Part shown: positions 24,105 to 50,520 of the stretch, piece by piece
How positions within the stretch are numbered: the first letter of the stretch is position 1
Layout of the letters: each line of letters opens with the position of its first letter
Sequence record: MK250019.1
Direction: 5' to 3' (one strand)
Length of the DNA stretch: 64,000 bases
Translations under genes and position numbers: made by a program
The notes under the pieces: generated by a model
The model's database searches: none
What the model was told of the DNA's origin: nothing
What the model saw: only the letters and a program-made list of their open reading frames with translations

Positions 24105-24386
24105 TTATAGTGACAAATTAATATTCATTAAATCAAATAATTTATTTAATTGATCTGTTGTTTGAACTTCTACTGAAGCAACAGTTTCCATATCATCATT
24201 TTGAATAATACAATTCCAATCTCTACCAATCATATTGGTATGACCATTATTAATTGTTATTGTAAATGTATGATTAATAGGACCTACTGTTTTTGTGAAA
24301 ACATCCATAGATTCAAAATCACCAAATCCACTATCATAATCATATTCAAAATTATGAAAGATTAATAAATCTTTTGTTATATCCAT
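24105..24386 (-). CDS. Hypothetical protein
   Basis: Clean ORF. Confidence 0.7.
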   Translation of the reverse strand: MDITKDLLIFHNFEYDYDSGFGDFESMDVFTKTVGPINHTFTITINNGHTNMIGRDWNCIIQNDDMETVASVEVQTTDQLNKLFDLMNINLSL

Positions 24387-24404
24387 TTTAAAATATATTT
24401 TTAA

Positions 24405-25256
24405 TTAAATATCTTCTTCATATGTATCATCATCCTCGTCATCATGACTATTTAATTTATCATATGAATCCATAATAGCTTGTAATACTTTTTTCCCTTC
24501 TGTAATATATTGTTCATCATAATGCCAGGATTGACCAGCATTTCTTGAATTACAAAAAGTTCCATTCAATAAAGCTAATGTATTAATAAAAGAACACCAC
24601 TCTATTGTAGCATCTGCAAATACATCCCAATTTACTACAGAATTATTATAAAATCCCATAGATCTTGGTAATGTAGATAACAAATTCCATGTATACATAT
24701 TTGGCATATAATCATGATATTTGTCATCTTGTAAATCTGCTTCAATCTTAATACGATCATTTACATTATAATCAAATATATTATCATATGTACCTATTTT
24801 ATGAAGAATTTCTTTCATTAAATCAATGTCATATGTCATTGATTTATATATTGAATACTTCTCATATATAACAGTATATTCATTCTGTTCAGTAGGTGCA
24901 TATCGAGCTTTACTTATTGTATCTAATTTTGTAAATAAATCTTTAACTGCATCTGGTTGTTCATCATATTTTTTATACTTATTCCAGTTATATAAAATAA
25001 TTTCTGTAATTTTGATGAAATCCATATTAAGTTTACCTTTAAGTATTCTTGTAGTTTCATCTTCATCGTAATCATCAAATACACCATAATCGCCCATAGA
25101 ACCTATAACAGGAATATGCATAGGAATTAATGGACTTTCCAAATAACAAGGAATATTTGAAACATTCTTATTTTTCTTACAAATAATAGCTACAGTTGTT
25201 TCACCTCGTTTTATAGGAACTCGTGAAAAAAATCCGGATACACAAAAATCACCCAT
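24405..25256 (-). CDS. Hypothetical protein (283 aa)
   Basis: Clean ORF. Confidence 0.75.
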   Translation of the reverse strand: MGDFCVSGFFSRVPIKRGETTVAIICKKNKNVSNIPCYLESPLIPMHIPVIGSMGDYGVFDDYDEDETTRILKGKLNMDFIKITEIILYNWNKYKKYDEQPDAVKDLFTKLDTISKARYAPTEQNEYTVIYEKYSIYKSMTYDIDLMKEILHKIGTYDNIFDYNVNDRIKIEADLQDDKYHDYMPNMYTWNLLSTLPRSMGFYNNSVVNWDVFADATIEWCSFINTLALLNGTFCNSRNAGQSWHYDEQYITEGKKVLQAIMDSYDKLNSHDDEDDDTYEEDI

Positions 25257-25257
25257 T

Positions 25258-25752
25258 TTATCCTATGTTTTTAATATAATTATTTAAAATATCAGTCCAT
25301 TTTTCATTATCTGCAATATTACAGATATATCGTATTGCACTAGAAAAACAATTTTCTAATGTATTAAAAGACAAATAAGATTCGCCTTCATTAACATGTT
25401 TTTCCCATAGCTGGTTTGCAACAGTGCTTACAGGAATAATAACATATGACCATTCCTTATTTTCTTTACTATATGTTGGTTGAATGATAAAACCCATATA
25501 TTTTTCAAACCAATCAATAACTTCAAAAACAGTAGGTGCTGGAATCCAATTTGCAGATGGATAAGTAATACCCCAATCAGAATTATGTGGTTCCAAATCT
25601 CCTGTATGCCATACACGTTCAGCAGTTGGGTTTTTAGGATCTCCTTTAACTGCTTTAATACCTACAGGTGCCTTTAAATATAAATCTTCAGTATATTCAT
25701 CAAAACCTAAGTTATTAAGAATTACTGATAAATTAAAATCAACATGTTTCAT
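25258..25752 (-). CDS. Hypothetical protein
   Basis: Clean ORF, coupled to its neighbours. Confidence 0.75.
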   Translation of the reverse strand: MKHVDFNLSVILNNLGFDEYTEDLYLKAPVGIKAVKGDPKNPTAERVWHTGDLEPHNSDWGITYPSANWIPAPTVFEVIDWFEKYMGFIIQPTYSKENKEWSYVIIPVSTVANQLWEKHVNEGESYLSFNTLENCFSSAIRYICNIADNEKWTDILNNYIKNIG

Positions 25753-25757
25753 TATCT

Positions 25758-26186
25758 TTATAATTTAATATCATCTGAATTTAATAATGTATTTCTCTTA
25801 TTATCAACAAGAATAAACCGTGCATTAATATATAACAGTTCATTCTTTAATTTTTGAACATCTTTTTTAGATGTATTTTCAAATATAATAAATTTATATG
25901 ACGAAAAATATTCTAATAGTTCTTCAAAAATATTTCTTAATTGTAACATATCACCAAAACGTTCAAAATTATTATAATAACGTTCATGTGGAATTGGTTT
26001 ATTATTACAAATATTTTCTACCAATTCTATAATTTCATCACATTTTTCAAATAACCTTAATATATCATCTTTTTTATCATTATTATGATATTCTGGTTTC
26101 TTTGAATATAAATTCCACATATGACTAAATATATAGCGATATATAGAAAATCTATTATTATAAAACGTTAAATCAATTCTTTCCAT
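25758..26186 (-). CDS. Hypothetical protein
   Basis: Clean ORF directly downstream of a class I promoter. Confidence 0.75.
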   Translation of the reverse strand: MERIDLTFYNNRFSIYRYIFSHMWNLYSKKPEYHNNDKKDDILRLFEKCDEIIELVENICNNKPIPHERYYNNFERFGDMLQLRNIFEELLEYFSSYKFIIFENTSKKDVQKLKNELLYINARFILVDNKRNTLLNSDDIKL

Positions 26187-26200
26187 TTATATATTTTATT

Positions 26201-26236
26201 AATACAAAGATACACATTTATTTTTAAATATAAAAA
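26201..26236 (-). promoter_or_regulatory. Bacteroidota-type (host RNAP) promoter, class I
   Basis: Minus strand TTTTTATATTT-N-TGTATCTTTGTATT contains the TAnnTTTG -7 consensus; one of six copies sharing an exact 14-mer. Confidence 0.8.
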
Positions 26237-26237
26237 T

Positions 26238-26678
26238 TTAACGTGCACGCATTACTTCAAAATATTGTTCAATTAACTTATTAATTAAAAGTTCATATGT
26301 AAATCCATAAGGATTGTTTGGACCAAATACTTTCATATCTGTTGGTGATATAGCATATTGTAATTTCGTATCACCTATTTTTACTTTATTAATATTATCT
26401 TCTGTCAATGGAATATCACTTATATAACTAAATAATCGTATAGTATAAGATTTAAATACAGGAGATAAAAAAATCTTCGCATATAGATATGGTGTAGATG
26501 GTGAATTTAATTTATATACATATGTTTTACCTGCCCAATCATCATATGTAAATAACCATTGTAAAGGATATACATCTTTAAATTCTGGTAATATATCTAT
26601 ATTCGAAACTGATTTAGTTACAATTTCTGGATCTAATTTTGGTTTACCTTTATTTAATAGTTTATCTATTATTTTCAT
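26238..26678 (-). CDS. Hypothetical protein
   Basis: Clean ORF. Confidence 0.75.
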   Translation of the reverse strand: MKIIDKLLNKGKPKLDPEIVTKSVSNIDILPEFKDVYPLQWLFTYDDWAGKTYVYKLNSPSTPYLYAKIFLSPVFKSYTIRLFSYISDIPLTEDNINKVKIGDTKLQYAISPTDMKVFGPNNPYGFTYELLINKLIEQYFEVMRAR

Positions 26679-26682
26679 ATAA

Positions 26683-27345
26683 TTATTCTATAATTTTTAA
26701 ATCATCTGGTATATAACAATCACTACCTAAATATTTGATATATTCTTTAACTGGTTTCTTTACTTTTTTCCAATATGGTAATTTATCATCTTTACTTTGA
26801 TAATAGATATAACTATCAAAATATGTTATTTCCTCTATTTTACCATCATGTTCAACTTTACATGTTTTATAATTATCTTCATCGAAATAGCTTGCAAGAT
26901 CCATCCATACTAATAAATCTTCTAATATCATTATTGAAAATGGTATAGTAATATATGCTGTATTCGTTGTTTTCTTTTCATATATAATATTTCCCATATT
27001 ATCCTTTGAAACTGTTAATCCTTTATAATCGCCTGTAATTTGCCAATTCGGATTATCAATAAAGTATTGTAATAAAAATTCTAATGGTTTTCTTTCTTCA
27101 GGAATTATAGAATAATCTATTGATAAATTATATTCACCAAATCTTAAATTATCTGCTATGCATTGTCTTACATCAATTACTAAACGTTTTCTTTGTTCTT
27201 TATTAAAATTATCAAATTCATATTTTGCTATATTTAATGCATGTTGATGTGCAGCAATAGTATGTCTACCTATTGCATATCTATATGACATCCATACTAA
27301 ATCTTCATGATATGCATTTAAATATTCATCTTTCTATTTTTTCAT
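26683..27345 (-). CDS. Hypothetical protein; probable start at 27345 with TAG at codon 4
   Basis: In-frame upstream ATG gives MKK(Q)KDEYLNAYHEDLVWMSYRY; the alternative start is 27291. Confidence 0.65.
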
Positions 27346-27355
27346 ATAAAATAAA

Positions 27356-27393
27356 AAAGTCTGTTTATATTTTATACAATATAAACAGACTTT
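27356..27393. terminator. Intrinsic terminator downstream of clpP
   Basis: 15-bp stem aaagtctgtttatat/atataaacagacttt. Confidence 0.85.
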
Positions 27394-27400
27394 AGTTTTA

Positions 27401-28090
27401 TTATTTACTAGTTAATATCTTATCAATCATACCCTTTGTTCCGTATGATTTAGCCTCTTCTGAACTCATCCAAAAATCTCTATCAGCATCTTTCTTAATT
27501 CGAGAAAGTGTTTGTCCTGAATGTGTAGATATAATATCATATAATTCATTCTTAAGTCTATTAACTTCTTTACATGTAATCTCAATATCACTAGCTTGCG
27601 TATGTGGTCCTGTAGACGACATTGGTTGGTGGATCATCACACGTGAATGTTTCAATGCGCATCGCTTTCCTTCTGCACCTGCACATAACAAGATACTCGC
27701 CATACTTGCAGCCATTCCAGCACAAATAGTTGAAACATCTGGTCGTATAAGTTGCATAGTATCATAAATCTCAAGTCCTGAATAAACATCACCACCTGGA
27801 GAATTTATATACAGATATATATCTGCCTTTTTATCTGTTGTGTCAAGATATAACAGTTGAGATGCAATAATATTTGCACTATCTGGTGTTACTGGATTAC
27901 CAAGAAAAATAATTCTATCCATCATTAATCTTGAAAAAACATCCATCTGTGAAACATTAAGTTGACGCTCTTCAAGAATTGTAGGATTCTGATAACCATT
28001 ATAAACACCAGATTTATTAATATAATCATGTAAGTATAAACTACTTACACCATTTGAAATCATAAACTTTTCAAAATCTGTTTTTACCAT
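27401..28090 (-). CDS. clpP: ATP-dependent Clp protease proteolytic subunit (host-like)
   Basis: DVFSRLMMDRIIFLG, YINSPGG, AASMAS (Ser), MIHQP (His), RDFWMS (Asp). Confidence 0.95.
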   Translation of the reverse strand: MVKTDFEKFMISNGVSSLYLHDYINKSGVYNGYQNPTILEERQLNVSQMDVFSRLMMDRIIFLGNPVTPDSANIIASQLLYLDTTDKKADIYLYINSPGGDVYSGLEIYDTMQLIRPDVSTICAGMAASMASILLCAGAEGKRCALKHSRVMIHQPMSSTGPHTQASDIEITCKEVNRLKNELYDIISTHSGQTLSRIKKDADRDFWMSSEEAKSYGTKGMIDKILTSK

Positions 28091-28581
28091 ATATTTTTAT
28101 ATTTCTTTCTATAACAATTTTTCAATAATGATGTTACGTGAATATTAGGATAATCACAATGATTATTAGGATTTGTTTCTGTATATATATCAGGATAAGA
28201 ATCTAATATAAATTTAACAACACCTTGTGACCTTGAAATTCCTGCTGAACAATGAACATAAATATCTTTACCTAAATTTCTTTCTATGAAATTAAATAAT
28301 TCATATGCTTGCTCATCTGATAAACCTTTAATTGATTTAGCATATTCAGTTTCCTCTTCTGAAATATCATTTCCATATGCATATGTTAAATCATAATCAG
28401 TAATATCATAGAAATCTAAATTAATAACATTTTCTGCTGAATTAAATATATGATATTCATCTGAAACATTTGGTTCACATATAGAAATTATAGCTACATT
28501 ATTTGGTAAAGTGCGATTATTCCAATTATTCTTTTCCATTAATTTTTTAAATCCATTGAAGGATTCACACCATATCTTCAT
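28084..28581 (-). CDS. Protein-tyrosine / dual-specificity phosphatase-like protein
   Basis: CX5R P-loop VHCSAGISRS. Confidence 0.85.
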   Translation of the reverse strand: MKIWCESFNGFKKLMEKNNWNNRTLPNNVAIISICEPNVSDEYHIFNSAENVINLDFYDITDYDLTYAYGNDISEEETEYAKSIKGLSDEQAYELFNFIERNLGKDIYVHCSAGISRSQGVVKFILDSYPDIYTETNPNNHCDYPNIHVTSLLKNCYRKKYKNIW

Positions 28582-29185
28582 ACTCTTTTATTTGTTTTTC
28601 AATTAACGTACATTCATCCTGATATTTCTTTACAGTTTCTAATATATTATTAATCTGCTTTTTCTTTTTATCTAATTTCTGATTCAAATGTCTAATAATA
28701 AGTTTTTTAATATCTACATAATCCGCAAAAATATTTAAAACTGCATTTCTAAATTGAATTGCACGCTGTAAAATTTCAGATATTTTTGTGTCTGTAATAT
28801 CACAACAAAATATATATGGTAACTTATCATTTAATTCATCACATGTTGACATAAATTTAGATATACAACATGATAATGCTAAATGTAACATAGAAGGTTC
28901 ATATGTTTTTGGTTCATTATCATCTTTATTTGAATCATCTATAATATCATCAAAGAAATCATTAAGCTGATAAAAAATATCTAAACATAAATCTTCTGAA
29001 TCATATATATAATCTCCTAATGTTATATTATAATCCATATAATAATCAGGAATATTTGTTAATATATCACAGTTATAACTACCAAATATATCTAATAAAA
29101 TTTTTGGATACCTTTCAGTTCCTTCTGTTTTACATAAATCAGAAAACTGTTTATATAAAGTTTTTAAATCATCATAACTTACCAT
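28565..29185 (-). CDS. Hypothetical protein
   Basis: Clean ORF with C-terminal coiled coil. Confidence 0.7.
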   Translation of the reverse strand: MVSYDDLKTLYKQFSDLCKTEGTERYPKILLDIFGSYNCDILTNIPDYYMDYNITLGDYIYDSEDLCLDIFYQLNDFFDDIIDDSNKDDNEPKTYEPSMLHLALSCCISKFMSTCDELNDKLPYIFCCDITDTKISEILQRAIQFRNAVLNIFADYVDIKKLIIRHLNQKLDKKKKQINNILETVKKYQDECTLIEKQIKEYEDMV

Positions 29186-29188
29186 AAT

Positions 29189-29884
29189 TTACTTCAATTT
29201 ATCTTTAAGATTAATTAATGTATTATTTACATTCATTGTAAAATGAAAAATTGCTTCTTTTGCACATTTATTAATATAATTATACAAATCAGTTTTTGTA
29301 ATAAAATCCATAGATTCTTCTGAATTCATCCATGACTTTGTAATAACTGCATCATGATTGCTTATAAATTTATATTCAATATGATCCCAATTATCACCGC
29401 ATAATCTGAACTCATCATAATTTATCCACACTCTATTCATTTTAATATCTACTGACTTTAACATGATATATGTTTCATCAAAATCAAAATAGTTATCATC
29501 ATATGAATTATCACCTTGTGTTATATTCTGATAAAAGATACAATTAACATCTCTTATTACTTTACCAGTATCAATATAATTATGAAGAATATAATCTCTT
29601 AATTCTATATTGTACTTTGATGAAAAATCAGTAACAGGACATTCATTTGCAATATACTCTAAACGATATAATGGTATATATCTAATATCTTCATTATTCA
29701 CATTCAAATAACGTCGTTTTACTAGTTTAAATGTATATGTATTTTTACCTATTTGAATTGTTACTTCTTCTTTTGCACAAAAATCTTGATATGTATGTAA
29801 TTTATTAAGTAGTAACTTTATATAATTAGTTACCATTTCATTTCCAAGATTATCTATAGGAATTTCATAATATTCGTATTTCAT
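29189..29884 (-). CDS. Hypothetical protein
   Basis: Clean ORF. Confidence 0.7.
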   Translation of the reverse strand: MKYEYYEIPIDNLGNEMVTNYIKLLLNKLHTYQDFCAKEEVTIQIGKNTYTFKLVKRRYLNVNNEDIRYIPLYRLEYIANECPVTDFSSKYNIELRDYILHNYIDTGKVIRDVNCIFYQNITQGDNSYDDNYFDFDETYIMLKSVDIKMNRVWINYDEFRLCGDNWDHIEYKFISNHDAVITKSWMNSEESMDFITKTDLYNYINKCAKEAIFHFTMNVNNTLINLKDKLK

Positions 29885-29961
29885 ATAACTAACTTAATTT
29901 AATAATTAAACAAAAATAGAGATTAAGAATTTATAAACAATCTTAATATCTATATAATTCT

Positions 29962-30165
29962 TTACTTATTACTTGATGAACGAATAGGAAATAGTAATCG
30001 TGAAACTGCCATCAAACACATTGCATGAATATATGTAATCTTTGGAAGACCAAAAACAAATGGCATTACATAATTCCAGCAAATCATAAAAAAGATTGCA
30101 CCAATTATAATACAAATAATTGAAATAATTACGATTCCTACAAGTTCAAATAAATGTTCCTTCAT
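29962..30165 (-). CDS. Small membrane protein
   Basis: 67 aa with two hydrophobic segments. Confidence 0.7.
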   Translation of the reverse strand: MKEHLFELVGIVIISIICIIIGAIFFMICWNYVMPFVFGLPKITYIHAMCLMAVSRLLFPIRSSSNK

Positions 30166-30273
30166 ATTACTTATTATTTTTGTTTATTATTTGTTTTATT
30201 ACTTAATAAACAATATAAAATAGAGGATATAATTTCTCTTTTATATCGTTTTTTAGCATATCTACCTTTTGAT

Positions 30274-30513
30274 TTAACTAAGGTTTCTTGTTTCATTTTT
30301 CTCATTATTATTGTAATAATTTATTAAATCAGCTTTCATTTCTTTACGAAACTGAGTATCTCTCTTTCTATTTCTAATTACTCGATCTTCTGCAATTTCA
30401 CAATTATAACGTCTCCATTTATTTAAAATAGAACGTTTATACTTAGGTTTAATTTTACCTTTATTGTCATGCATATAATCATACGCAGCTTGCTCTTTAA
30501 AATTATTACTCAT
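30274..30513 (-). CDS. Small basic hypothetical protein
   Basis: Clean ORF. Confidence 0.6.
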   Translation of the reverse strand: MSNNFKEQAAYDYMHDNKGKIKPKYKRSILNKWRRYNCEIAEDRVIRNRKRDTQFRKEMKADLINYYNNNEKNETRNLS

Positions 30514-30544
30514 TGTATCTTATATATAATTTTAGTAATGTCAG

Positions 30545-31330: not shown

Positions 31331-31346
31331 TAATTATTCTATATAA

Positions 31347-31375
31347 CTTATATAGATATAAACACAAATTGTTTA
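31347..31375 (-). promoter_or_regulatory. Sigma70-like promoter (class II) upstream of ncRNA C
   Basis: TAAACA-N17-TATAAG. Confidence 0.45.
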
Positions 31376-31432
31376 ATAATCTAATAAACAAAATTATTAA
31401 TATTATGTTATCTTAATGTTAATTAAGAAAAA

Positions 31433-31444
31433 ATTTCAAAGAAC
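31433..31444 (-). promoter_or_regulatory. boxA-like antitermination element
   Basis: GTTCTTTGAAAT, identical to 37495-37506; resembles the bacterial rRNA-operon boxA. Confidence 0.5.
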
Positions 31445-31461
31445 ACTTTGTTTTTAATAAC

Positions 31462-31497: not shown

Positions 31498-31522
31498 TAT
31501 ATTGAAGAAAAAATTAATATTT

Positions 31523-32350: not shown

Positions 32351-32369
32351 AATAAATTTTATTTAAATA

Positions 32370-43425: not shown

Positions 43426-43454
43426 TATTAAAAATATTTTAATGTTTAATATAT

Positions 43455-44153
43455 TTATTTTCTACGAATTGCTCTAATTGGTAATGATGATAACATATCA
43501 TATATAGTTATACCAACATTATTTGCATTTAATATTTTATATCCATAATTAAAATCATATCCATCATACTCAGTAGAACTCCAGAAACATGCATCTGTTT
43601 TATCCTGTACTTTCTTTCCTTTAATATAACCTGTTGAAGGAATAATTATGAATTTATTAGGATTTTTTAATGATGAAACTTTAAATGCAATACCATTTCT
43701 TCCTACTCGTATTTGTGATACATCTGTATTATTAATTAATTCTTCAATATCTTTTTTAGAAGGTATATCCCAACTGGTTCCTAATATAAATTCAGGAACT
43801 GAATTATATTTTATTGTTTTATTTTTTAAACGACTATATAATAACTCTACATAAGAATCCCAGTTAATACCAGCTGCACTATCTAGTGAAATTTTATCTA
43901 ATGTAAATCCTTTTCGTCTAAAATAACCTCCTGTTTTTGTTGGTCTAGTTGCTCCGATATTTCTATCACACCATAAGTTTCCTGATGGTAAATCTAAATC
44001 AATAGCTTCATATTCAATTTTATCTTTTCCTATAGTTACACCTGTTACTTTTTCGGCAAATACCGTATCTATGGAATCTTTATCTGATGCTAAAATATTA
44101 TCAGTTTCTTCATCAAATAAAGATTCCATAAGTATTTTTATATTTTTATTCAT
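43455..44153 (-). CDS. Bacteroidota 'DLGLPSG..W' domain protein (DUF1566 / C-type-lectin-fold-like) with an acidic leader
   Basis: YEAIDLDLPSGNLWCDRNIGA, WDIPS..DIEEL, IIPSTGY, FWSST and C-terminal LPIRAIR. Confidence 0.7.
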   Translation of the reverse strand: MNKNIKILMESLFDEETDNILASDKDSIDTVFAEKVTGVTIGKDKIEYEAIDLDLPSGNLWCDRNIGATRPTKTGGYFRRKGFTLDKISLDSAAGINWDSYVELLYSRLKNKTIKYNSVPEFILGTSWDIPSKKDIEELINNTDVSQIRVGRNGIAFKVSSLKNPNKFIIIPSTGYIKGKKVQDKTDACFWSSTEYDGYDFNYGYKILNANNVGITIYDMLSSLPIRAIRRK

Positions 44154-44183
44154 TAATACTATATTAATATTTAAAATATTTAT

Positions 44184-45329
44184 TTAATAATAACGCCCAT
44201 ATTTGCCACTTGGCTTATCTAATGTAAACTCATTTGTTATAACCCAATATGAAATGCCGACATTATAACATAGTATAATAATAAGAATTGCGATATACCA
44301 ACCAATACTTAATTCTATACTTAGATAATTAAAATCATTAAATTCTTTTCTATGCCAATTTTTATCAATTTGTGTATCTAACCATTCAGCATAATCTTTG
44401 AAATTAATATCAGGATGTTTTATAAAATAATCTCTTGTTTTAACTTCAAGCATAGGTTCATCACTCCACGAGAATGGATTACACCAAATAACTGTATTAT
44501 TTTTCACACCGAGACACACGACAAATTCATTTTTATTTCCACCTTGCCAATATGCTTTTTGCATTTCCGCAACTTCTAATGAAGGATTATTAAAGCATAG
44601 AATAAAAACATGTATTTGATTTTTTGGACCTCTATAACCATTTAAATATCGTACTGCATCAATATCAGTATCAGTCGCAGTGAAACCAAGAATAGGATTT
44701 TGATCATTATTTTTAATTTCTGGATAATCAAATAACTTATTTTCCTTAATTTCTTCTTCACTCATATTTCCGTATTTGAATATAGAATATGATGAAGCTT
44801 TAACTTTATTTTGATATAAATGTGTCCACGTTACAGGATAAGAGTTTTCTCTTGTTCTGTTCCATGATGTAACATATGCATCGCCATCTTTTGATCTATA
44901 TGATCTATGCATATCTTTAAAAACAGCTGGCATATTTAATTTATAACAAATTAATTTATATTCATCTTCAGATACATCATTTGTTTCACCTGTTACTGTT
45001 TCATATACATATCGTTTAGGATGATAACGCCGTTCCGGAACTACATATGTTTCTGTACGAGTTTTACCTTTACCACATGAAACCGTTCTTGTATGTGTTA
45101 CCATAACAGTTTCATCCCAATCTTCATAATATGTTATTTTACTTACCAAATCACTTAAATATTCTTTATCTAATGATGATATATAAACAAATGAATATTT
45201 AAGAGCAAAAAATAACAATATTGAAGGAACAAGTACAACTACATATTCCCAAAGTGCTGTTTTTTCTCTGAATTTAAATGCAAGTATTCCCACTGTAACA
45301 ATAGGAATTAAAAAGATTAATATTTCCAT
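44184..45329 (-). CDS. Membrane protein (381 aa; two N-terminal and one C-terminal TM segment)
   Basis: Hydrophobic termini; clean ORF. Confidence 0.75.
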   Translation of the reverse strand: MEILIFLIPIVTVGILAFKFREKTALWEYVVVLVPSILLFFALKYSFVYISSLDKEYLSDLVSKITYYEDWDETVMVTHTRTVSCGKGKTRTETYVVPERRYHPKRYVYETVTGETNDVSEDEYKLICYKLNMPAVFKDMHRSYRSKDGDAYVTSWNRTRENSYPVTWTHLYQNKVKASSYSIFKYGNMSEEEIKENKLFDYPEIKNNDQNPILGFTATDTDIDAVRYLNGYRGPKNQIHVFILCFNNPSLEVAEMQKAYWQGGNKNEFVVCLGVKNNTVIWCNPFSWSDEPMLEVKTRDYFIKHPDINFKDYAEWLDTQIDKNWHRKEFNDFNYLSIELSIGWYIAILIIILCYNVGISYWVITNEFTLDKPSGKYGRYY

Positions 45330-45365
45330 ATTTAATTAATACTATTTACTGATATTCATATTTAT

Positions 45366-45401
45366 AATACAAAGATACATTTTTATTATTAAATAAAAAA
45401 A
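45366..45401 (-). promoter_or_regulatory. Bacteroidota-type promoter, class I
   Basis: Exact 14-mer copy. Confidence 0.8.
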
Positions 45402-45423
45402 TCTTGAAGATTTTACATTATCT

Positions 45424-45876
45424 TCAAGATTTCTCATATTTCTTTTTTAATTGTTCATATAATTTACGTTCATTATCTTCATTTTCTTTTTTATTCTTTT
45501 CCTCGATATATGTTTTGAATCTATTATAACGTTTATCACGCTCTTTATAATAGTCATCTCCATTTTTCAGAAAGTCTTCAAGTTGTTTTGCTGTTAAACC
45601 TCGCGTTGAATAATCATCATGCTCACCTCTTCCATAATAATCATCCCACTCAATATAATATAACCCATTAAATTTAGATATTTCAATATATGTTATATTA
45701 CAAGATTCTACATCTACATCATCATTACAGAATGAATGAAGAAACTGCTTATATGATTTTTTACTTGTAAATTCTTTTATAAACTTCTGTTTATATTCTT
45801 TGTATTTCTGTAATGAATTATTGTATTCTTTTTCTATTTCATTAAATTTCTCAAATGAAAAATTAGTATTATCCAT
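45424..45876 (-). CDS. Hypothetical protein, tandem paralogue of 45966-46412
   Basis: MDNTNFSF...ERKLYEQLKKKYEKS. Confidence 0.8.
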   Translation of the reverse strand: MDNTNFSFEKFNEIEKEYNNSLQKYKEYKQKFIKEFTSKKSYKQFLHSFCNDDVDVESCNITYIEISKFNGLYYIEWDDYYGRGEHDDYSTRGLTAKQLEDFLKNGDDYYKERDKRYNRFKTYIEEKNKKENEDNERKLYEQLKKKYEKS

Positions 45877-45879
45877 ATT

Positions 45880-45936
45880 TTAATAAATTTTAGTAAAATT
45901 ATTATAAAAATCTTATGCATATCTTACAAAATATGG
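45880..45936 (-). pseudogene. Relic copy of the 3' end of gene 46415-46948
   Basis: Closely matches 46415-46471; PYFVRHAEDFYDNFTKIY becomes PYFVRYA*DFYNNFTKIY. Confidence 0.7.
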
Positions 45937-45965
45937 AAAAAACCTTTAAAGACGTTGTATTATCT

Positions 45966-46412
45966 TCAAGATTTCTCATATTTCTTTTTCAAACGTTCAT
46001 ATAATTCTCTTTCTTCTTTATCTGGATCTATATATTCATTATTTTTTGCATTTTGAATACGTTCATAACGTTCTTTAACTTTCTCATAATATTCATCTCC
46101 ATTTTTGAAAAAGTCATCAATCTGCTTTATTGTTAAAGGTTTAGTCATGAATGATTCAGTTTCACCAAGGAAAGAATCATCCCATTGAATATAAAATATA
46201 TCACCGTATCTTAATAACTGAATAAATGAAATATTTTGATTAAATACATCTATATCTTTATCATCTCTATGTTTATTCAAGAAATATTTATATGATTTCA
46301 TATTCTCAAATGCAACACTAAAAGATTTTATATGTTCATTATATTTACGTAAGATGTCTGCAAATTTATCATCATCTTCTACATACTGCTTAAATGAAAA
46401 AGTATTATCCAT
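45966..46412 (-). CDS. Hypothetical protein, tandem paralogue of 45424-45876
   Basis: MDNTFSF...ERELYERLKKKYEKS. Confidence 0.8.
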   Translation of the reverse strand: MDNTFSFKQYVEDDDKFADILRKYNEHIKSFSVAFENMKSYKYFLNKHRDDKDIDVFNQNISFIQLLRYGDIFYIQWDDSFLGETESFMTKPLTIKQIDDFFKNGDEYYEKVKERYERIQNAKNNEYIDPDKEERELYERLKKKYEKS

Positions 46413-46414
46413 AA

Positions 46415-46948
46415 TTAATAAATTTTTGTAAAATTATCATAAAAATCTTCTGCATGTCTTACAAAATATGGTCCATCTGGACAATCATCATATAATGCTT
46501 TATAAAGAATAAGATTATTATTTTTTCGCCAATAATAATTATTTCTTTCTATATATTCGCCATCAATACAATCAGGTTCAATATCAAGATCTTTAAATAA
46601 AATATTTTCTTGAATAACCTCATATTCTCGATGATCAAAATCTTTTGCATTATTGTATATATAATGTCCTATACCCGTTTTTGATTCACATATATGTTCA
46701 GTAGTATACCAAAAATCATTAAAATCATAATGTTCATCTGGAACTTTATCTTTATTCATATATTGTTTTTCAACATGCAATTTTGTTACTGTACATTTTG
46801 CATAACTTCCAAACCAACATATTTCAAATATTGTTTCATTATAGAATTCATATATGTTTAATATTCTTTTTGGTTCAACTAGTAAAGGAAATTCTTTACA
46901 TTTATGAAATATATAATCTCCAATTTTTAATTCATTGAATGTTTTCAT
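46415..46948 (-). CDS. Hypothetical protein with a C-terminal DUF1653-like segment
   Basis: ILYKALY...YFVR..EDF. Confidence 0.6.
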   Translation of the reverse strand: MKTFNELKIGDYIFHKCKEFPLLVEPKRILNIYEFYNETIFEICWFGSYAKCTVTKLHVEKQYMNKDKVPDEHYDFNDFWYTTEHICESKTGIGHYIYNNAKDFDHREYEVIQENILFKDLDIEPDCIDGEYIERNNYYWRKNNNLILYKALYDDCPDGPYFVRHAEDFYDNFTKIY

Positions 46949-46952
46949 ATTA

Positions 46953-47633
46953 TTAACTTATAATAGATAAAATATTTTCTATTTGATTAAATAAACTTTC
47001 TTGGTGTTCATCAATTAATTTTAATGAATATGATAATTTCATATCTTTCCATGAATCCATAAGAAATTTAATATGGTTTCCTAAAAATAATTTCCAATCA
47101 TTAATACGTAATTCATCTTTTAGACCTATTGCGCATTGTGTAAAATAATCGGATGAAAATGAAACGAGTATATCACATTCTCTTAATATACGTTGATATA
47201 AATTAAGTTTATCATCTTCTATAACATATGGATAACATGTTGCTATGATATTATCATGAACAATTTCTTTAATTCGTTCAACTGTATCTATATCATTAGG
47301 GAATTCTCTTGTAAAATAATCTTCCATAATTTTACATGCATTACTTACATTTATATCATCTGTAAATCTTCCTGCACTATGATTAAAATCATGAAATATT
47401 GCAGATACAAGCAAAATATATAAACCTTCTGAATCTAATTTAAATTCATAATCATCTTTTTGACTTTCCTCATATATACAACATATATGATACATCATTG
47501 ATAATGTATGATTAGCATTATGATATGGATTAGAAAGTGTTATACAGTTATTAACATAAAAAGAAAATATTTTCTTTAAATTATCATTTCCATTAATGAA
47601 ATTAAATACTTTATTATAATCTATATTAATCAT
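46953..47633 (-). CDS. HD-domain phosphohydrolase (PDEase-like)
   Basis: PYHNANH, LLVSAIFHDFNH, RECDIL. Confidence 0.8.
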   Translation of the reverse strand: MINIDYNKVFNFINGNDNLKKIFSFYVNNCITLSNPYHNANHTLSMMYHICCIYEESQKDDYEFKLDSEGLYILLVSAIFHDFNHSAGRFTDDINVSNACKIMEDYFTREFPNDIDTVERIKEIVHDNIIATCYPYVIEDDKLNLYQRILRECDILVSFSSDYFTQCAIGLKDELRINDWKLFLGNHIKFLMDSWKDMKLSYSLKLIDEHQESLFNQIENILSIIS

Positions 47634-47682
47634 TTTTAAATTTATTTTTTAACTTATATTTTCTTATATATGTATGAATATA

Positions 47683-47720
47683 AAAAGTCCTGATTAACAT
47701 TCGAATTAATCAGGACTTTT
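47683..47720. terminator. Intrinsic terminator
   Basis: 15-bp stem aaaagtcctgattaa/ttaatcaggactttt downstream of the prohead protease gene. Confidence 0.9.
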
Positions 47721-47753
47721 ATATATATTTAACATAATTTTATTTAATATTAA

Positions 47754-49508
47754 TTAAATATTATCATATGTTTGCTCAAGAATCTTTGCATAATCCATAT
47801 GGTAACCAAGTGGATGTTCTGATTCCTGTACAGGTTTCATAATAGGTTTTTGTGCAACTTTATAACGACGAACGAATTCTTCATTCATTACTCGCTGTGC
47901 TTCTCTTGTACGAAGACCTGTTTTCTCCCAGAATTCATCTACATCTTGTTTATTTTCGAGAACCCAGTAACGAGCCATATTTTCAATTGCATCCTGCTCT
48001 TGAAGTGGTGCTTTTGTATAAAGTTCAATATCTTTAGGATCTGCTAATCTTAACCAGTTTTTGAGAACACGTTTTTCTGCAAGTAGAGGAACATTCCATT
48101 GATTGTTAATATCTTCTATCTTATAGATATTATGTTCAACTACATATTTCATACACTTCTTTTTCTGTGTAGGTTTAAGAGCTGCAAATTTAGCAAAATT
48201 TTCAGGAGATAATGAAATAGAGAATGGATAACGTGAAACAATTTGTTCTTTAATACTTTCTTTCTTTTCAAGATTATCAAGGAGATCCTGGAATTCTTCC
48301 ATATCTTTTTCCGTTTTTGCTGCAATTCTTTCTGCTTTTTCTGTAGATGTTTTTGAGTCTTCATCAGCTGGAACTGCATCATCTGCATCATCATTTGCAG
48401 TATCTGTATCAGAAACATCTTCTGAATCATCTGACTTATCTGCATCACCATCATCGGCTTTATCTTCATCTGACTGTCCTTCAATGTCGATAATATCCGC
48501 ACGTTTTTCATCTTTATCATCACTGTCTTCATCAGATGATTCACCATCAGCATCTTCTGATGTAATATCAAGAATTAAGGCACGCTTCTTCTGTTTCTCT
48601 TCATCTGTTGGTTCTGACTTATTATCATCTGTAGATGCATTTGTATCATTATCCTTATTATCATCTGATTTATCATCTTTACTATTACTATTAGATGATG
48701 AATTATCTGCACCATCAGGTGTTACATCGGCTTCAGGTAATTTGAATTCTTCTTCATCTTCCTCAAGTAATGGTTTAGATAAATCTTTTAAGTTAACTGG
48801 CTTGTTTTTCATTTCCATACATTTTTCATTAATTGGTGCTTCTTGCTCTAATTCATTAACAGTAACGCCTTCCATAAGAACTTTATATTTCTTATTAGTT
48901 GTTTCTTTCTGTGATTTTTGAGCAGAAACAGATTCATTAAGATATGACATAGTATTTACACCAAGTGATTCATTGATTCTATCAAGACGTGCTTCTGCAA
49001 AACCTGGTGTACATACAATATCATAAGTGAATATTTGAGCGATTTCAACTTCATGTGTTTTTTCATCTACATCACCAGCAGCACGAGAAGATACAAATAA
49101 AGGATAACCAGCTTCAACTAATTCCTGGGCGATTTTACCGTTTGGCGTATCAAGGATTTCAAGTTTTCCCATTACATTATGGTTTTCCTGATCATACCAA
49201 AGATCTGTAATTTTATGAGAGGCTTCTTTTAATTGAATATCAAAACGTCCTTCAGGATGATCTAATTCACCAAGAATTGAACCACTTTGTTTAATCATTT
49301 CACGTAAATATCCAAGATGACGTAAAACTTCCTTTTCAGGATAACTTCTATTGTTTCTGTTAATTACAACATGTCCAGGTACAGAGCATGCAGTAAAAAC
49401 ACCAGAGAATATATATTTCTTATTATTTGGTGTACTGTCAAAGGCTTCATTAAGAGTAAGAGGCTGCAATGACTTACTTTTTATCATTAATTTACTATTC
49501 TTTGTCAT
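47754..49508 (-). CDS. T4 gp21-like prohead core protease with a long acidic, scaffold-like C-terminal extension
   Basis: NRNNRSYP, LGELDHP, ASHKIT, GKLEILDTPNG, VSSRAAG, TYDIVCTPGF, followed by an Asp/Ser-rich low-complexity region. Confidence 0.9.
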   Translation of the reverse strand: MTKNSKLMIKSKSLQPLTLNEAFDSTPNNKKYIFSGVFTACSVPGHVVINRNNRSYPEKEVLRHLGYLREMIKQSGSILGELDHPEGRFDIQLKEASHKITDLWYDQENHNVMGKLEILDTPNGKIAQELVEAGYPLFVSSRAAGDVDEKTHEVEIAQIFTYDIVCTPGFAEARLDRINESLGVNTMSYLNESVSAQKSQKETTNKKYKVLMEGVTVNELEQEAPINEKCMEMKNKPVNLKDLSKPLLEEDEEEFKLPEADVTPDGADNSSSNSNSKDDKSDDNKDNDTNASTDDNKSEPTDEEKQKKRALILDITSEDADGESSDEDSDDKDEKRADIIDIEGQSDEDKADDGDADKSDDSEDVSDTDTANDDADDAVPADEDSKTSTEKAERIAAKTEKDMEEFQDLLDNLEKKESIKEQIVSRYPFSISLSPENFAKFAALKPTQKKKCMKYVVEHNIYKIEDINNQWNVPLLAEKRVLKNWLRLADPKDIELYTKAPLQEQDAIENMARYWVLENKQDVDEFWEKTGLRTREAQRVMNEEFVRRYKVAQKPIMKPVQESEHPLGYHMDYAKILEQTYDNI

Positions 49509-49720
49509 ATAAACAAAATAATTCTTATTTTTATTATTTATTCATTCTATATATTTATTAAAAATGCAATTTAAAATAAATATTTAAATATGATATAACT
49601 ATAATGAATAAAAATATAAAACATTTATTAGAATATATTGTTAACGAAGAAAAAATATATATAAAAGAGAACAGAAATAGTTAAATTCTTCAACTAAATA
49701 AAAAGTAAATGGATAACTTA

Positions 49721-50332
49721 TCATCGAGATAAGTTATCCATTTTTTGTTTACAATTATCAAATATGTTTTTAAGTTTTGTACAAAATGAATCAATATCAT
49801 CAGGTGAATATCCATTAAAGGTAATTTCCCATAAAACTTCAGCAATAATTGTATTTTTATTGAAATTCTTTAAGGTATCTGGGTGAATATTCAAATACAA
49901 AACATTACACCAATCCATAAGATCTATTGCATAACTAACATCTCTTTCTTTAATAAAACCAGATACATTGATATATTCATCATGATTTCCTAAATATTCA
50001 TCAATTACTGTATTTAAACATATGTACATATTAAATGATGGTTTAATAGGCTTCATATTAGTTAAAATTTGAAATGCTTGTTTATAACCATCAATATTTT
50101 TCTTTTCATCATGATGATGTACATACATTGCATTCATAATATCATTAAATGATGAATTCATTATTAATTCCTTAAAAGAAATAGTACGATCATTATTTCT
50201 TTTTGGACATGTATTTAATGTATTCAATGGTCTAATGTTATTTAGAGTCGGTTGAATTAAGTTGTATTTACAACCATGATGAGAACAATTCTTACACCAA
50301 ATTTTCCCAATTTTACAATAATTCTTACTCAT
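49721..50332 (-). CDS. Hypothetical protein (possibly DUF6557-like)
   Basis: YAIDLMDW...IIAEVLWEITFNG; the family call is from memory. Confidence 0.55.
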   Translation of the reverse strand: MSKNYCKIGKIWCKNCSHHGCKYNLIQPTLNNIRPLNTLNTCPKRNNDRTISFKELIMNSSFNDIMNAMYVHHHDEKKNIDGYKQAFQILTNMKPIKPSFNMYICLNTVIDEYLGNHDEYINVSGFIKERDVSYAIDLMDWCNVLYLNIHPDTLKNFNKNTIIAEVLWEITFNGYSPDDIDSFCTKLKNIFDNCKQKMDNLSR

Positions 50333-50484
50333 AATTATTATTTTTTATTCACCTTATTTAAATATTCTTGTTTCATACACATATCAATATATTCATCTTC
50401 TAACATACCTCCGATGAAATCACAAAAACATTCTTTAAATTTTATGAAAAACTTTTTCATATAAATATTAATTTTAATTATAAC

Positions 50485-50520
50485 AATACAAAGATACATA
50501 ATTATTTTTAAATAAAAAAA
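50485..50520 (-). promoter_or_regulatory. Bacteroidota-type promoter, class I
   Basis: Exact 14-mer copy. Confidence 0.8.

What the first reader, a model, noticed from the sequence alone, without database searches (positions are those of the whole stretch)
24105..50520. TAG use follows promoter class, consistent with the code switch acting as an infection timer
Almost all minus-strand genes at 24.1-35.7 kb and 38-50.3 kb, the blocks carrying the six Bacteroidota-type promoters, are intact under the standard code; the exception is 26683-27345. Replication genes behind sigma70-like promoters carry 1-2 TAGs (rnh, polB, endonuclease). Structural-type genes carry many (fibre about 20, tape measure more than 20). 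Several genes have a TAG within the first 8 codons (26683-27345 at codon 4, polB at codon 7, endonuclease at codon 8), which would abort them immediately before the switch. Late-gene bias of recoded codons has been described; the three-tier pattern and N-terminal gate codons are my inference.
Basis: partly seen in the sequence, partly recalled or inferred. Interest (0 to 1): 0.68.

Follow-up and report, generated by a model that had tools for sequence, protein, structure and literature searches.

The report
Promoter class predicts TAG use in Lak megaphage
In this giant gut phage, which reads the stop codon TAG as glutamine late in infection, genes behind a host-type promoter avoid TAG, genes behind a second promoter-like motif are full of it, and several core genes carry one TAG near their start, which gives the published 'code switch as timer' idea concrete sequence handles but is not a new kind of system.

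Summary
The window is bases 62001-126000 of Prevotella phage Lak-A2 (MK250019.1), a known TAG-to-Gln recoded megaphage. The TAG-free minus-strand block is real: 40 ORFs, 7,200 codons, 1 TAG against about 57 expected.

It occurs 54 times in Lak-A2 and 56 times in Lak-B2. The first gene behind it is TAG-free in 45 of 47 cases in each genome. The two Lak-A2 exceptions carry their TAG near the C-terminus; in one the Lak-B2 orthologue ends there, so TAG probably serves as its stop.

A second motif, ATAAATA 20-35 nt before the ATG (like the T4 late promoter), precedes TAG-rich genes. TAG makes up 0.33 of Gln codons there, against 0.011 behind the first motif (Fisher p about 1e-19).

The proposed sigma70-like class is not supported.

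N-terminal TAGs are partly supported. In genes with a single TAG, that TAG lies in the first decile in 15 of 35 (KS p=4e-6; Lak-B2 12 of 28). No other codon shows this. Carriers include polB, gp32, NrdD, an Mre11-like protein, HSP90 and the major capsid protein.

The timer idea itself is published (Borges et al.). I found the promoter link and the gate-codon pattern in none of the four papers I read. No expression data exist.

The parts
24105..35716 (-). TAG-free gene block I. It includes ClpP 27401-28090, a phosphatase-like ORF 28084-28581, polynucleotide kinase/phosphatase 32370-33305 and DUF488 35141-35497. Most ORFs match no family.
   Evidence: ORFs are identical under both codes except 26683-27345. 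Pfam hits.
37765..50499 (-). TAG-free gene block II, mostly of unknown function. It includes DUF6557 49721-50332.
   Evidence: Blocks I and II together: 40 ORFs, 1 TAG against 57 expected.
26205..26212 (-). P1 promoter-like motif, core TATCTTTG preceded by TG and a T-run. It lies 18 nt upstream of the ATG of 25758-26186.
31466..31473 (-). P1 motif with no ORF for 950 nt downstream. It heads the conserved ORF-free stretch 30514-31465.
33910..33917 (-). P1 motif 46 nt upstream of the ATG of 33324-33863.
42174..42181 (-). P1 motif 37 nt upstream of the ATG of 41501-42136.
45370..45377 (-). P1 motif 40 nt upstream of the ATG of 44184-45329.
50489..50496 (-). P1 motif upstream of a short ORF and of 49721-50332. 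It marks the upstream end of block II.
26683..27345 (-). The one TAG-bearing gene inside the block (220 codons, no family). The TAG is codon 4, at 27334-27336. The ATG follows a conserved terminator hairpin plus T-run (about 27353-27393) and no P1 motif.
   Evidence: The TAG is kept in Lak-A1 and Lak-C1, and in Lak-B2 at codon 6 after a 6-nt insertion.
47754..49508 (-). T4 gp21-like prohead protease (Peptidase_S77). It has 0 TAG in Lak-A2 and 6 TAGs in Lak-B2. ATAAATA at 49535-49541 lies 26 nt before the ATG.
   Evidence: A pig metatranscriptome contig covers 47754-49524.
60977..62524 (-). N-terminal fragment of a split family-B DNA polymerase. Its single TAG is codon 7, at 62504-62506.
   Evidence: Pfam PF03104 and PF00136 positions 28-154. 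The TAG is conserved in Lak-B2 and in five IMG/VR relatives while neighbouring codons change, several of them synonymously. The next in-frame ATG is codon 44.
59955..60968 (-). Homing endonuclease directly behind the polB fragment, with TAGs at codons 8 and 125. It contains N run 60402-60433.
   Evidence: PHROG homing/HNH endonuclease hits on both sides of the N run in one frame. No orthologue at this place in Lak-B2.
8304..9503 (-). 5'-3' exonuclease / RNase H-like gene with TAGs at codons 28 and 157. ATAAATA lies 37 nt before the ATG.
2..7891 (+). Window part of a 2,698-codon tape-measure-like gene with 22 TAGs. Its true start is upstream of the window, so the 'codon 11' TAG is not N-terminal.
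14884..21048 (-). A 2,054-codon ORF with 29 TAGs and no family match.
10929..10977 (.). Divergent ATAAATA (P2) motifs, at 10929-10935 and 10938-10944 on the minus strand and 10971-10977 on the plus strand. They serve the TAG-bearing genes 9587-10909 and 11008-12897.
14817..14823 (-). P2 motif 24 nt before the ATG of 12945-14792 (7 TAGs).
38619..38889 (.). Two masked N runs (38619-38648 and 38859-38889) inside a 495-nt ORF-free gap.

Best explanation
The window is part of the Lak-A2 megaphage, which decodes TAG as glutamine once its own suppressor tRNAs (anticodon CUA) and release factor 2 are at work.

Transcription class and codon class coincide in this genome.
- About 54 copies of a conserved host-type promoter (P1) head short units whose genes avoid TAG. 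P1 is a T-run followed by TGTATCTTTG, whose last eight bases fit the Bacteroidota -7 box TAnnTTTG. These genes can be translated with the host's standard code.
- The P1-headed units include a sigma factor, RF2, a CCA-adding enzyme and an RNA-ligase-like gene. A polynucleotide kinase/phosphatase lies in the same TAG-free block.
- A second motif (P2), ATAAATA 20-35 nt before the start codon, resembles the T4 late promoter. It heads genes in which a third of glutamine codons are TAG.
- I infer that host RNA polymerase reads P1 first, and that a phage sigma factor then redirects it to P2.

The lock looks binary: zero TAGs, or at least one. Several core replication genes and the major capsid protein carry exactly one TAG within their first 20 codons. 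There it would abort translation cheaply before the switch. The number of further TAGs more likely reflects relaxed selection in large, low-copy proteins than a third timing tier.

Shown: the motifs, their positions, the TAG statistics and their conservation. Inferred: promoter function, the order of expression and the gating role.
For: Identity and code:
- The window is Lak-A2.
- The genome has two tRNA-CUA genes and an RF2 gene.
- 231 Lak-A2 TAG codons align with CAA or CAG in Lak-B2.

P1 motif:
- 54 copies in Lak-A2 and 56 in Lak-B2, with none in a Markov shuffle at the same score.
- 53 of 54 point at a co-oriented gene. The median distance to the ATG is 37 nt.
- 32 copies sit at orthologous genes in both genomes.

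TAG load of the first gene behind each motif:
- Behind P1 in Lak-A2: 45 of 47 TAG-free, 2 TAGs in 8,234 codons, TAG/Gln 0.011. Lak-B2: 45 of 47, TAG/Gln 0.009.
- Behind P2 in Lak-A2: 20 of 98 TAG-free, 451 TAGs in 43,235 codons, TAG/Gln 0.33. Lak-B2: 24 of 102, TAG/Gln 0.35.
- Fisher p=3e-19 for Lak-A2 and 5e-18 for Lak-B2.
- TAG density rises with gene order behind P1: 1.3, 1.9, 5.1 and 8.1 per 1,000 codons.
- The two Lak-A2 P1 exceptions have their TAG near the C-terminus. In one (record 220077-221219) the Lak-B2 orthologue ends there; in the other it does not.

Selection:
- Gln codons of TAG-free genes are TAG in Lak-B2 in 1.3% of cases, against 14.5% in TAG-bearing genes (p=2e-48). This holds although TAG-free genes are the more diverged set.

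P2 position: 99 of 149 intergenic ATAAATA copies lie 20-34 nt before an ATG.

Early content:
- RF2 is TAG-free and is the third gene behind a P1. A sigma70-family gene (regions 2 and 4) is TAG-free and second behind a P1. A second sigma gene has 4 TAGs and a P2.
- P1 also heads a CCA-adding enzyme, an RNA-ligase-like gene, FolD and a NadR-like gene.
- The suppressor tRNAs lie directly behind a TAG-free operon.

Gate codons:
- Single-TAG genes with aligned N-termini have the TAG in the first decile in 15 of 35 (KS p=4e-6). Lak-B2 gives 12 of 28 (p=8e-5).
- Among all codons, TAG ranks first for 'the only copy lies in the first 20 codons': 14 observed against 2.9 expected in Lak-A2, and 8 against 2.0 in Lak-B2. 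CAA scores 0.44-fold (Lak-A2) and CAG 0.26-fold (Lak-B2).
- The segments before the next in-frame ATG evolve like coding DNA. Differences at codon positions 1/2/3 are 97/61/245.
- Carriers are polB, an Mre11-like phosphoesterase, HSP90, NrdD (the TAG lies inside the ATP-cone domain), a PD-(D/E)XK nuclease, gp32 and the major capsid protein.
Against: - There are no transcript 5' ends and no time course. The only RNA data are assembled contigs, which cannot show starts.
- P1 lacks a canonical -33 TTTG at 19-21 nt. The full Bacteroidota pattern is not enriched in the window: 2 hits against 6.5 expected.
- 118 TAG-free genes with an upstream gap of 40 nt or more carry neither motif.
- 16-25 TAG-free genes carry P2, for example the prohead protease.
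- I could not identify the promoter of the suppressor tRNAs.
- N-terminal TAGs are no better conserved than N-terminal CAA/CAG codons: 54% against 69%. Conservation therefore does not prove selection for a gate.
- Genes whose start is fixed by P2 spacing show no N-terminal excess: 7 observed against 7-8.5 expected.
- Part of the raw excess comes from ORFs whose starts are probably called too far upstream.
Confidence: 0.6

Rival explanations
1. Cost model without timing. TAG is decoded slowly or incompletely, so selection removes it from highly expressed genes. It tolerates TAG only where failure is cheap, in the first codons or in large low-copy proteins. The promoter link then arises because promoter class tracks expression level.
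For: - The major capsid protein has 1 TAG in 661 codons.
- The prohead protease has 0 TAGs although it carries P2.
- The highest TAG loads are in giant ORFs.
- N-terminal TAGs are not better conserved than N-terminal CAA/CAG.
Against: - TAG-free genes are mostly small genes of unknown function clustered behind one promoter motif, not obvious high-expression genes.
- Genes with more than 2 TAGs show no positional gradient.
- Other rare codons, including CAG, are not N-terminally enriched.
- RF2, a sigma factor and a CCA-adding enzyme sit in P1-headed TAG-free units, and the suppressor tRNAs lie behind a TAG-free operon. This fits timing.
Confidence: 0.22
2. The N-terminal TAGs are an annotation artefact. 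Reading TAG as sense lets ORFs run upstream to a false ATG, and the true starts lie behind the TAG.
For: - The excess is largest in genes whose start is not supported by an orthologue: 17 observed against 8-9 expected.
- The excess is absent in P2-anchored genes.
- In some cases an ATG follows the TAG closely, for example at record 534184.
- My own calls over-extended the short ORF at 50338-50499.
Against: - In 12 of 18 low-TAG cases the next possible start lies at least 20 codons behind the TAG, or there is none at all.
- Pfam domains begin before that next start. The NrdD ATP-cone spans residues 1-85 with the TAG at codon 16, and Metallophos begins at residue 16.
- The upstream segments show a coding pattern of substitutions.
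- polB codons around the TAG change while the TAG stays.
Confidence: 0.1
3. The TAG-free blocks are recent imports from standard-code genomes that have not yet picked up TAG codons.
For: The TAG-free DNA holds host-like genes: ClpP, formate-THF ligase and FolD.
Against: - G+C content is the same as in the rest of the window.
- The same phage-specific motif heads 54 units.
- The genes and their TAG-free state are shared by Lak-A2 and Lak-B2 at 68% median identity.
- Gln-to-TAG exchange is 11-fold rarer there than in TAG-bearing genes.
Confidence: 0.04
4. One reading: Bacteroidota-type promoters give zero TAGs, sigma70-like promoters give 1-2 TAGs in replication genes, and late structural promoters give many.
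For: - Replication genes do carry 1-2 TAGs: polB, rnh, gp32, NrdD, the Mre11-like gene and DnaB.
- There are 58 single-TAG genes against 21 with two TAGs.
Against: - No sigma70-like motif separates the classes.
- Low-TAG genes carry P2 in 30-42% of cases.
- The capsid protein belongs to the low-TAG set.
- The A-rich box conserved upstream of polB is neither TATAAT nor TTGACA.
Confidence: 0.1

Closest known systems
Stop-codon recoding as a regulator of late and lytic genes in gut phages (Borges et al., bioRxiv 10.1101/2021.08.26.457843; Lak phages in Devoto et al. 2019, PMC6784885, and Crisci et al. 2021, PMC8346664)
   Same: Same organism group and same idea. Early genes and the switch machinery are compatible with the standard code, structural and lysis genes carry in-frame TAGs, and suppressor tRNA-CUA and RF2 are encoded by the phage.
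   Different: Those papers have no occurrence of 'promoter', and Borges et al. has none of 'N-termin'. New here:
- two discrete upstream motifs that predict TAG status;
- the single N-terminal TAG pattern;
- TAG probably used as a real stop in some early genes.
Bacteroidota housekeeping promoter (-33 TTTG, -7 TAnnTTTG; from my own knowledge of Bayley, Rocha and Smith 2000, not read here)
   Same: The invariant TATCTTFG-type core, TATCTTTG, fits TAnnTTTG. The motif lies 21-58 nt before start codons and also heads tRNA-containing stretches.
   Different: The upstream element is a T-run. Where a TTTG is present, it lies about 12 nt from the core rather than 19-21 nt. The core is far more uniform than host promoters, which suggests a phage-specific optimum.
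T4 late promoter TATAAATA, read by host polymerase with the phage sigma gp55 (from my own knowledge)
   Same: A short A/T box, ATAAATA, at a fixed short distance before late-type genes, in a phage with T4-like core genes: gp23, gp21, gp20, gp32, polB.
   Different: The base before the box is mostly A or G rather than T. I searched for no gp55 homologue. The phage encodes sigma70-family proteins instead. Promoter function is untested.
Amber-codon gating in synthetic biology (amber codons placed early in essential genes for biocontainment; from my own knowledge)
   Same: One early amber codon makes expression depend on a suppressor tRNA.
   Different: Here the pattern would be natural, conserved between clades, and used for timing.

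Membership tests
TAG-to-Gln recoded phage with code switch (genetic code 15) | Many genes are open only if TAG is read as sense | tested here: met
   210 of 578 genes carry 1,280 in-frame TAGs.
TAG-to-Gln recoded phage with code switch (genetic code 15) | TAG aligns with glutamine codons in relatives | tested here: met
   231 Lak-A2 TAG codons align with CAA or CAG in Lak-B2. Crisci et al. report Gln in 75-85% of informative positions.
TAG-to-Gln recoded phage with code switch (genetic code 15) | Phage-encoded suppressor tRNA(CUA) and RF2 | tested here: met
   two tRNA-CUA genes at record c144866-144938 and c145771-145845, outside the window. RF2 with no in-frame TAG.
TAG-to-Gln recoded phage with code switch (genetic code 15) | Switch machinery and early genes are readable in the standard code | tested here: met
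TAG-to-Gln recoded phage with code switch (genetic code 15) | TAG-bearing genes are translated later than TAG-free genes | not testable with these tools
   Only assembled contigs of RNA libraries were available.
Bacteroidota sigma-A type promoter | -7 box TAnnTTTG | tested here: met
   TATCTTTG is invariant in 54 sites.
Bacteroidota sigma-A type promoter | -33 TTTG 19-21 nt upstream of the -7 box | tested here: not met
   the full pattern has 2 hits against 6.5 expected; a T-run, or a TTTG at about 12 nt, stands there instead.
Bacteroidota sigma-A type promoter | Transcription start a few nt downstream, and use by host holoenzyme | not testable with these tools
   No reads with 5' ends.
T4-type late promoter | TATAAATA box at -10 of late genes | tested here: inconclusive
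   ATAAATA peaks 20-34 nt before the ATG. The preceding base is A or G more often than T. One RNA-library contig ends 10 nt downstream of a box.
T4-type late promoter | gp55/gp33-type late transcription factors | not tested
   I searched only for sigma70 region 2, which found three sigma-like genes.
sigma70-type promoter (TTGACA, 17 nt, TATAAT) as a separate class for replication genes | Motif enriched upstream of low-TAG genes | tested here: not met
   TATAAT is present in 34-47% of all classes. TTGACA is present in 0-1%.

The most novel reading that the evidence does not exclude
Lak phages use a two-key developmental lock. The first key is promoter class. The second is a single, positively selected amber 'gate' codon within the first 20 codons of core replication genes and the major capsid gene.

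TAG itself would have a time-dependent meaning. It is probably a true stop for some early genes and is read as glutamine later. The gate would be placed N-terminally so that pre-switch translation aborts after a few residues.
Probability: 0.4. Interest if true: 0.8.

Novelty: new variant of a known kind. Interest (0 to 1): 0.6.

Why it matters
The idea that phages use a change of genetic code to time their late genes has so far rested on where recoded codons lie relative to gene function.

Two short motifs now predict almost perfectly whether a Lak gene avoids or uses TAG. This gives defined promoters to test in vitro or in Bacteroides or Prevotella reporters, and it names candidate phage sigma factors.

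It also gives a short list of single-TAG genes in which one codon change should uncouple expression from the switch. That list includes polB, gp32, NrdD and the capsid protein.

The motifs improve annotation of these uncultured 540-kb genomes. They help place gene starts and transcription units, and they flag early genes that may end at TAG.

Tried and rejected
- The full Bacteroidota pattern (TTTG, 17-23 nt, TAnnTTTG) and plain TAnnTTTG are not enriched in the window: 2 hits against 6.5 expected, and 100 against 124. Only the specific TATCTTTG form matters.
- A softened weight matrix found only two convincing P1 variants, TATCGTTG and TAATTTTG.
- A k-mer search for a third motif, upstream of TAG-free genes without P1 and of TAG genes without P2, gave only terminator-hairpin words such as AGACTTTTTAT and no positioned box.
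- sigma70 motifs are not class-specific.
- Rfam found nothing in the whole window at gathering score, and nothing in 30300-31550 at E up to 1.
- No tRNA lies in the window.
I rebuilt the genome from the public record outside the window only.
- More distant polB relatives: the IMG/VR scan returned only relatives at 89% identity or more.
- RNA evidence: all runs are kept as contigs only, so starts, strand and level cannot be read.
- Conservation as a test of gate selection: N-terminal TAG is conserved in 54% and N-terminal CAA/CAG in 69%, so this test does not discriminate.
- Protein-level alignment misplaced the TAG of 26683-27345, reporting AAA in Lak-B2. The DNA alignment shows that the TAG is kept.
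- The sheath family PF04984 was not found.

Full report
IDENTITY AND SCOPE

The window matches Prevotella phage Lak-A2 (MK250019.1, 541,299 bp) at 100% identity, and window position x equals record position x+62000. G+C content is 25%.

I therefore fetched the record outside the window only and joined it to the window with the window's N runs left in place. I also fetched Lak-B2 (MK250021.1) as a second clade. Its orthologues share a median 72% amino-acid identity with Lak-A2.

Reading TAG as a sense codon is justified by the genome itself:
- ORFs merge under TAG=Q.
- There are two tRNA genes with anticodon CUA and an RF2 gene.
- 231 Lak-A2 TAG codons align with CAA or CAG in Lak-B2.
- All of this was already published for Lak.

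ASSEMBLY GAPS

Window 38000-60401 maps in register to record 100000-122401, so the two N runs inside the finding replace letters one for one. They lie in a 495-nt stretch with no ORF of 60 aa or more.

The third run (60402-60433) lies inside the homing-endonuclease ORF. The frame on both sides gives endonuclease hits. I looked up none of the masked letters.

THE OBSERVATION

Gene calls are my own. I took the longest ORF with TAA and TGA as the only stops, then applied a codon-usage score and overlap resolution. This gave 578 genes in Lak-A2. Of these, 368 have no TAG. The genome holds 1,280 TAG, 2,580 CAA and 1,084 CAG codons.

The minus-strand block at window 24105-50499 holds 40 ORFs, 7,200 codons and 150 CAA+CAG codons, but one TAG. 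The genome rate predicts 57 (P=8e-24). It is the longest such stretch in the genome.

The gene labels are only partly supported.

The block contains ClpP, a polynucleotide kinase/phosphatase, a DUF488 protein and many ORFs with no family.

PROMOTER CLASS ONE (P1)

The six "Bacteroidota promoters" are six TATCTTTG octamers, all on the minus strand. Genome-wide, this octamer preceded by TG occurs 54 times. Nearly all copies are intergenic and sit in a longer conserved motif: a T-run, an A-rich spacer, RTG, TATCTTTG, then TATTGT.
- A Markov shuffle of the genome gives no hit at the scores these sites reach.
- 53 of 54 sites point at a co-oriented gene. The median distance to the ATG is 37 nt.
- Five co-oriented sites have no ORF within 150 nt. 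Two lie next to the tRNA array (record 418122 and 418236). One lies about 730 nt upstream of a tRNA-Tyr gene (record 488865). One heads a conserved 0.95-kb ORF-free stretch in the window.
- Lak-B2 has 56 copies. 32 orthologous genes carry the motif in both genomes. The 15 discordant genes are TAG-free in both genomes, except one Lak-A2 gene with a C-terminal TAG.

PROMOTER CLASS TWO (P2)

A k-mer comparison of upstream regions of TAG-bearing genes gave ATAAATA, mostly preceded by A or G. Of 149 intergenic copies, 99 lie 20-34 nt before the called ATG. They often follow a hairpin and T-run. The box resembles the T4 late promoter TATAAATA (my own knowledge).

THE LINK BETWEEN PROMOTER CLASS AND TAG USE

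First gene behind P1:
- Lak-A2: 45 of 47 TAG-free, 2 TAGs in 8,234 codons, TAG/(TAG+CAA+CAG) = 0.011.
- Lak-B2: 45 of 47 TAG-free, ratio 0.009.

First gene behind P2:
- Lak-A2: 20 of 98 TAG-free, 451 TAGs in 43,235 codons, ratio 0.33.
- Lak-B2: 24 of 102 TAG-free, ratio 0.35.

Fisher tests give p=3e-19 for Lak-A2 and 5e-18 for Lak-B2. TAG density rises with the ordinal position of the gene behind P1: 1.3, 1.9, 5.1 and 8.1 per 1,000 codons. This suggests short units.

The two P1 "exceptions" in Lak-A2 have their TAG at codon 56 of 58 and at codon 358 of 380. In the second case the Lak-B2 orthologue ends at that point, so TAG probably acts there as a real stop. In the first case the Lak-B2 protein runs on past that position.

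The TAG-free state is maintained by selection. Gln codons of TAG-free genes are TAG in Lak-B2 in 1.3% of cases, against 14.5% for TAG-bearing genes (p=2e-48). This holds although TAG-free genes are the more diverged set.

One apparent counter-example fits the rule. The prohead protease (47754-49508) has a P2 motif and no TAG in Lak-A2, but six TAGs in Lak-B2.

WHAT P1 DRIVES

- RF2 is TAG-free and is the third gene behind a P1.
- A sigma70-family gene with regions 2 and 4 is TAG-free and second behind a P1. A second sigma gene has four TAGs and a P2.
- P1 also heads a CCA-adding enzyme, an RNA-ligase-like gene, FolD and a NadR-like gene.
- The two suppressor tRNAs lie directly behind a TAG-free operon that includes formate-THF ligase. 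A GIY-YIG endonuclease gene with 10 TAGs lies between them. I could not find their promoter.

This is the layout the published model predicts.

THE PROPOSED MIDDLE TIER

TATAAT is found upstream of 34-47% of genes in all three TAG classes. TTGACA is found upstream of 0-1%. The TACTATAAT before polB is not conserved in Lak-B2, whereas a different A-rich box is.

Low-TAG genes carry P2 in 30-42% of cases. That lies between TAG-free genes (9-13%) and TAG-rich genes (61-62%).

I found no third positioned motif. A sigma70-like class is therefore not supported.

N-TERMINAL TAGS

With longest-ORF starts, 33 genes have their first TAG within 8 codons, against 21-24 expected. Part of this excess is an artefact:
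- It is absent in genes whose ATG is fixed by P2 spacing (7 observed against 7-8.5 expected).
- It is strongest in genes with no orthologue support for the start.

A real core remains:
- In genes with 1-2 TAGs whose N-termini align one to one between the two genomes, the first TAG lies within 20 codons in 15 genes against about 6 expected (Lak-A2), and in 23 against about 8 (Lak-B2). Genes with more than two TAGs show no excess.
- For single-TAG genes, 15 of 35 (Lak-A2) and 12 of 28 (Lak-B2) have the TAG in the first decile (KS p=4e-6 and 8e-5).
- I repeated the test for every codon. TAG ranks first of 50-53 codons: 14 observed against 2.9 expected in Lak-A2, and 8 against 2.0 in Lak-B2. The synonymous codons are depleted (CAA 0.44-fold in Lak-A2, CAG 0.26-fold in Lak-B2). 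A general rare-codon ramp therefore does not explain it.
- The segments between the called start and the next in-frame ATG evolve like coding DNA. Differences at codon positions 1/2/3 are 97/61/245, against 447/259/1211 in the gene bodies.
- In 12 of 18 cases the next possible start lies at least 20 codons behind the TAG, or there is none.
- 13 of 18 are TAG in Lak-B2 as well.

The carriers are:
- an Mre11-like phosphoesterase (codon 9);
- HSP90 (codon 11);
- NrdD (codon 16, inside the ATP-cone domain);
- a PD-(D/E)XK nuclease (codon 14);
- gp32 (codon 18);
- the gp23-like major capsid protein (codon 11, its only TAG in 661 codons);
- the polB fragment in the window (codon 7).

The polB TAG is kept in Lak-B2 and in five IMG/VR relatives while neighbouring codons change, several of them synonymously. 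The TAG of 26683-27345 is kept in Lak-A1, Lak-C1 and Lak-B2, in the last at codon 6 after a 6-nt insertion. That gene follows a conserved terminator and has no P1.

One caution applies. N-terminal TAGs are no better conserved than N-terminal CAA/CAG codons (54% against 69%). Conservation alone therefore does not show selection for a gate.

INTERPRETATION

Most likely, host polymerase reads P1 units first. Their products can be made with the host code and include a sigma factor and RF2. The suppressor tRNAs lie nearby behind TAG-free genes. Transcription then moves to P2 units, whose messages need the new code.

The lock appears binary. One TAG is enough, and in highly used genes it sits near the start, where abortive translation costs least. 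TAG load beyond the first codon more likely reflects relaxed selection in large low-copy proteins.

Promoter function, the order of expression and the gating role are all inferences.

The main rival is a pure cost model without timing. I rate it lower for three reasons. TAG status follows a promoter motif rather than any sign of expression level. Multi-TAG genes show no positional gradient. No other rare codon behaves like TAG.

RNA DATA

Twenty-two public runs were listed for the window stretch, but all are kept as assembled contigs.

In one pig metatranscriptome, a contig of depth 236 covers 47754-49524. Neighbouring contigs have depths of 16-35. The contig's end lies 10 nt downstream of the P2 box at 49535-49541. 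Contigs cannot prove a start or exclude DNA, so this is only suggestive.

NOVELTY

The recoding, its late-gene bias and the timer model are published. In the four papers I read, the word "promoter" appears only once, for a T7 cloning promoter, and "N-terminal" never refers to codon position. My searches cover open-access text only.

The promoter-to-codon coupling, the ATAAATA class, the single N-terminal TAG pattern and the use of TAG as a probable stop in early genes are refinements of a known system, not a new kind.

Noticed in passing
window 30514-31465 (minus strand): A 0.95-kb stretch with no ORF, directly downstream of a P1 motif. It is about 80% identical to Lak-B2 over 1,187 nt and has locally G+C-richer segments. 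It may be a long non-coding RNA. Rfam has no match.
   Followed up: partly
window 60977-62524, and record 345475-346287 and 346643-347617 (L007): The family-B DNA polymerase is split. The window holds only the exonuclease domain and the first third of the polymerase domain. A homing endonuclease follows it in Lak-A2 but not in Lak-B2. Two further pieces lie about 222 kb away and are TAG-free.
   Followed up: partly
record 220077-221219, 258235-258726 and 318701-319030 (L004-L006): Otherwise TAG-free genes have a lone TAG at or near the position where the Lak-B2 orthologue ends. TAG therefore seems to serve as a real stop codon there. After the switch these proteins would be extended by 1-22 residues. 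Other lone C-terminal TAGs (for example record 167937-168113 and 134215-134541) lack this orthologue support.
   Followed up: partly
window 58016-58234, and 58465-59332: A TAG-free IF-1 homologue (Pfam eIF-1a, E=1e-21). Next to it is a run of four small paralogous ORFs that all begin MIKFK.
   Followed up: partly
window 27401-28090 and 62580-63188: Two ClpP-like protease genes in one window, both TAG-free in Lak-A2. The Lak-B2 orthologue of the second has a TAG at codon 6.
   Followed up: no
L003:18866-19845 (record 144866-145845): The two suppressor tRNA-CUA genes are separated by a GIY-YIG homing endonuclease gene with 10 TAGs. A tmRNA gene lies 2 kb further on, and a tRNA with anticodon UUA lies at record c211337-211409.
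   Followed up: partly
window 36413-37764: A 1.35-kb stretch without a credible ORF, lying between the two TAG-free blocks. Content unknown.
   Followed up: no
window 38556-38952: The two masked N runs are 240 nt apart, and their flanks translate to similar short peptides. They may mark two copies of a repeat. I did not examine them further because the letters are masked.
   Followed up: no
window 27353-27393 and 47640-47700, and many other intergenic sites: A family of similar terminator hairpins, with the stem words AAAGTCT and AGACTTTTTT, recurs between genes and dominates k-mer enrichment upstream of motif-less genes.
   Followed up: no
window 34192-34887: This gene is TAG-free in Lak-A2. 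Its Lak-B2 orthologue (43% identity) has a single TAG at codon 5, which is another N-terminal singleton.
   Followed up: no
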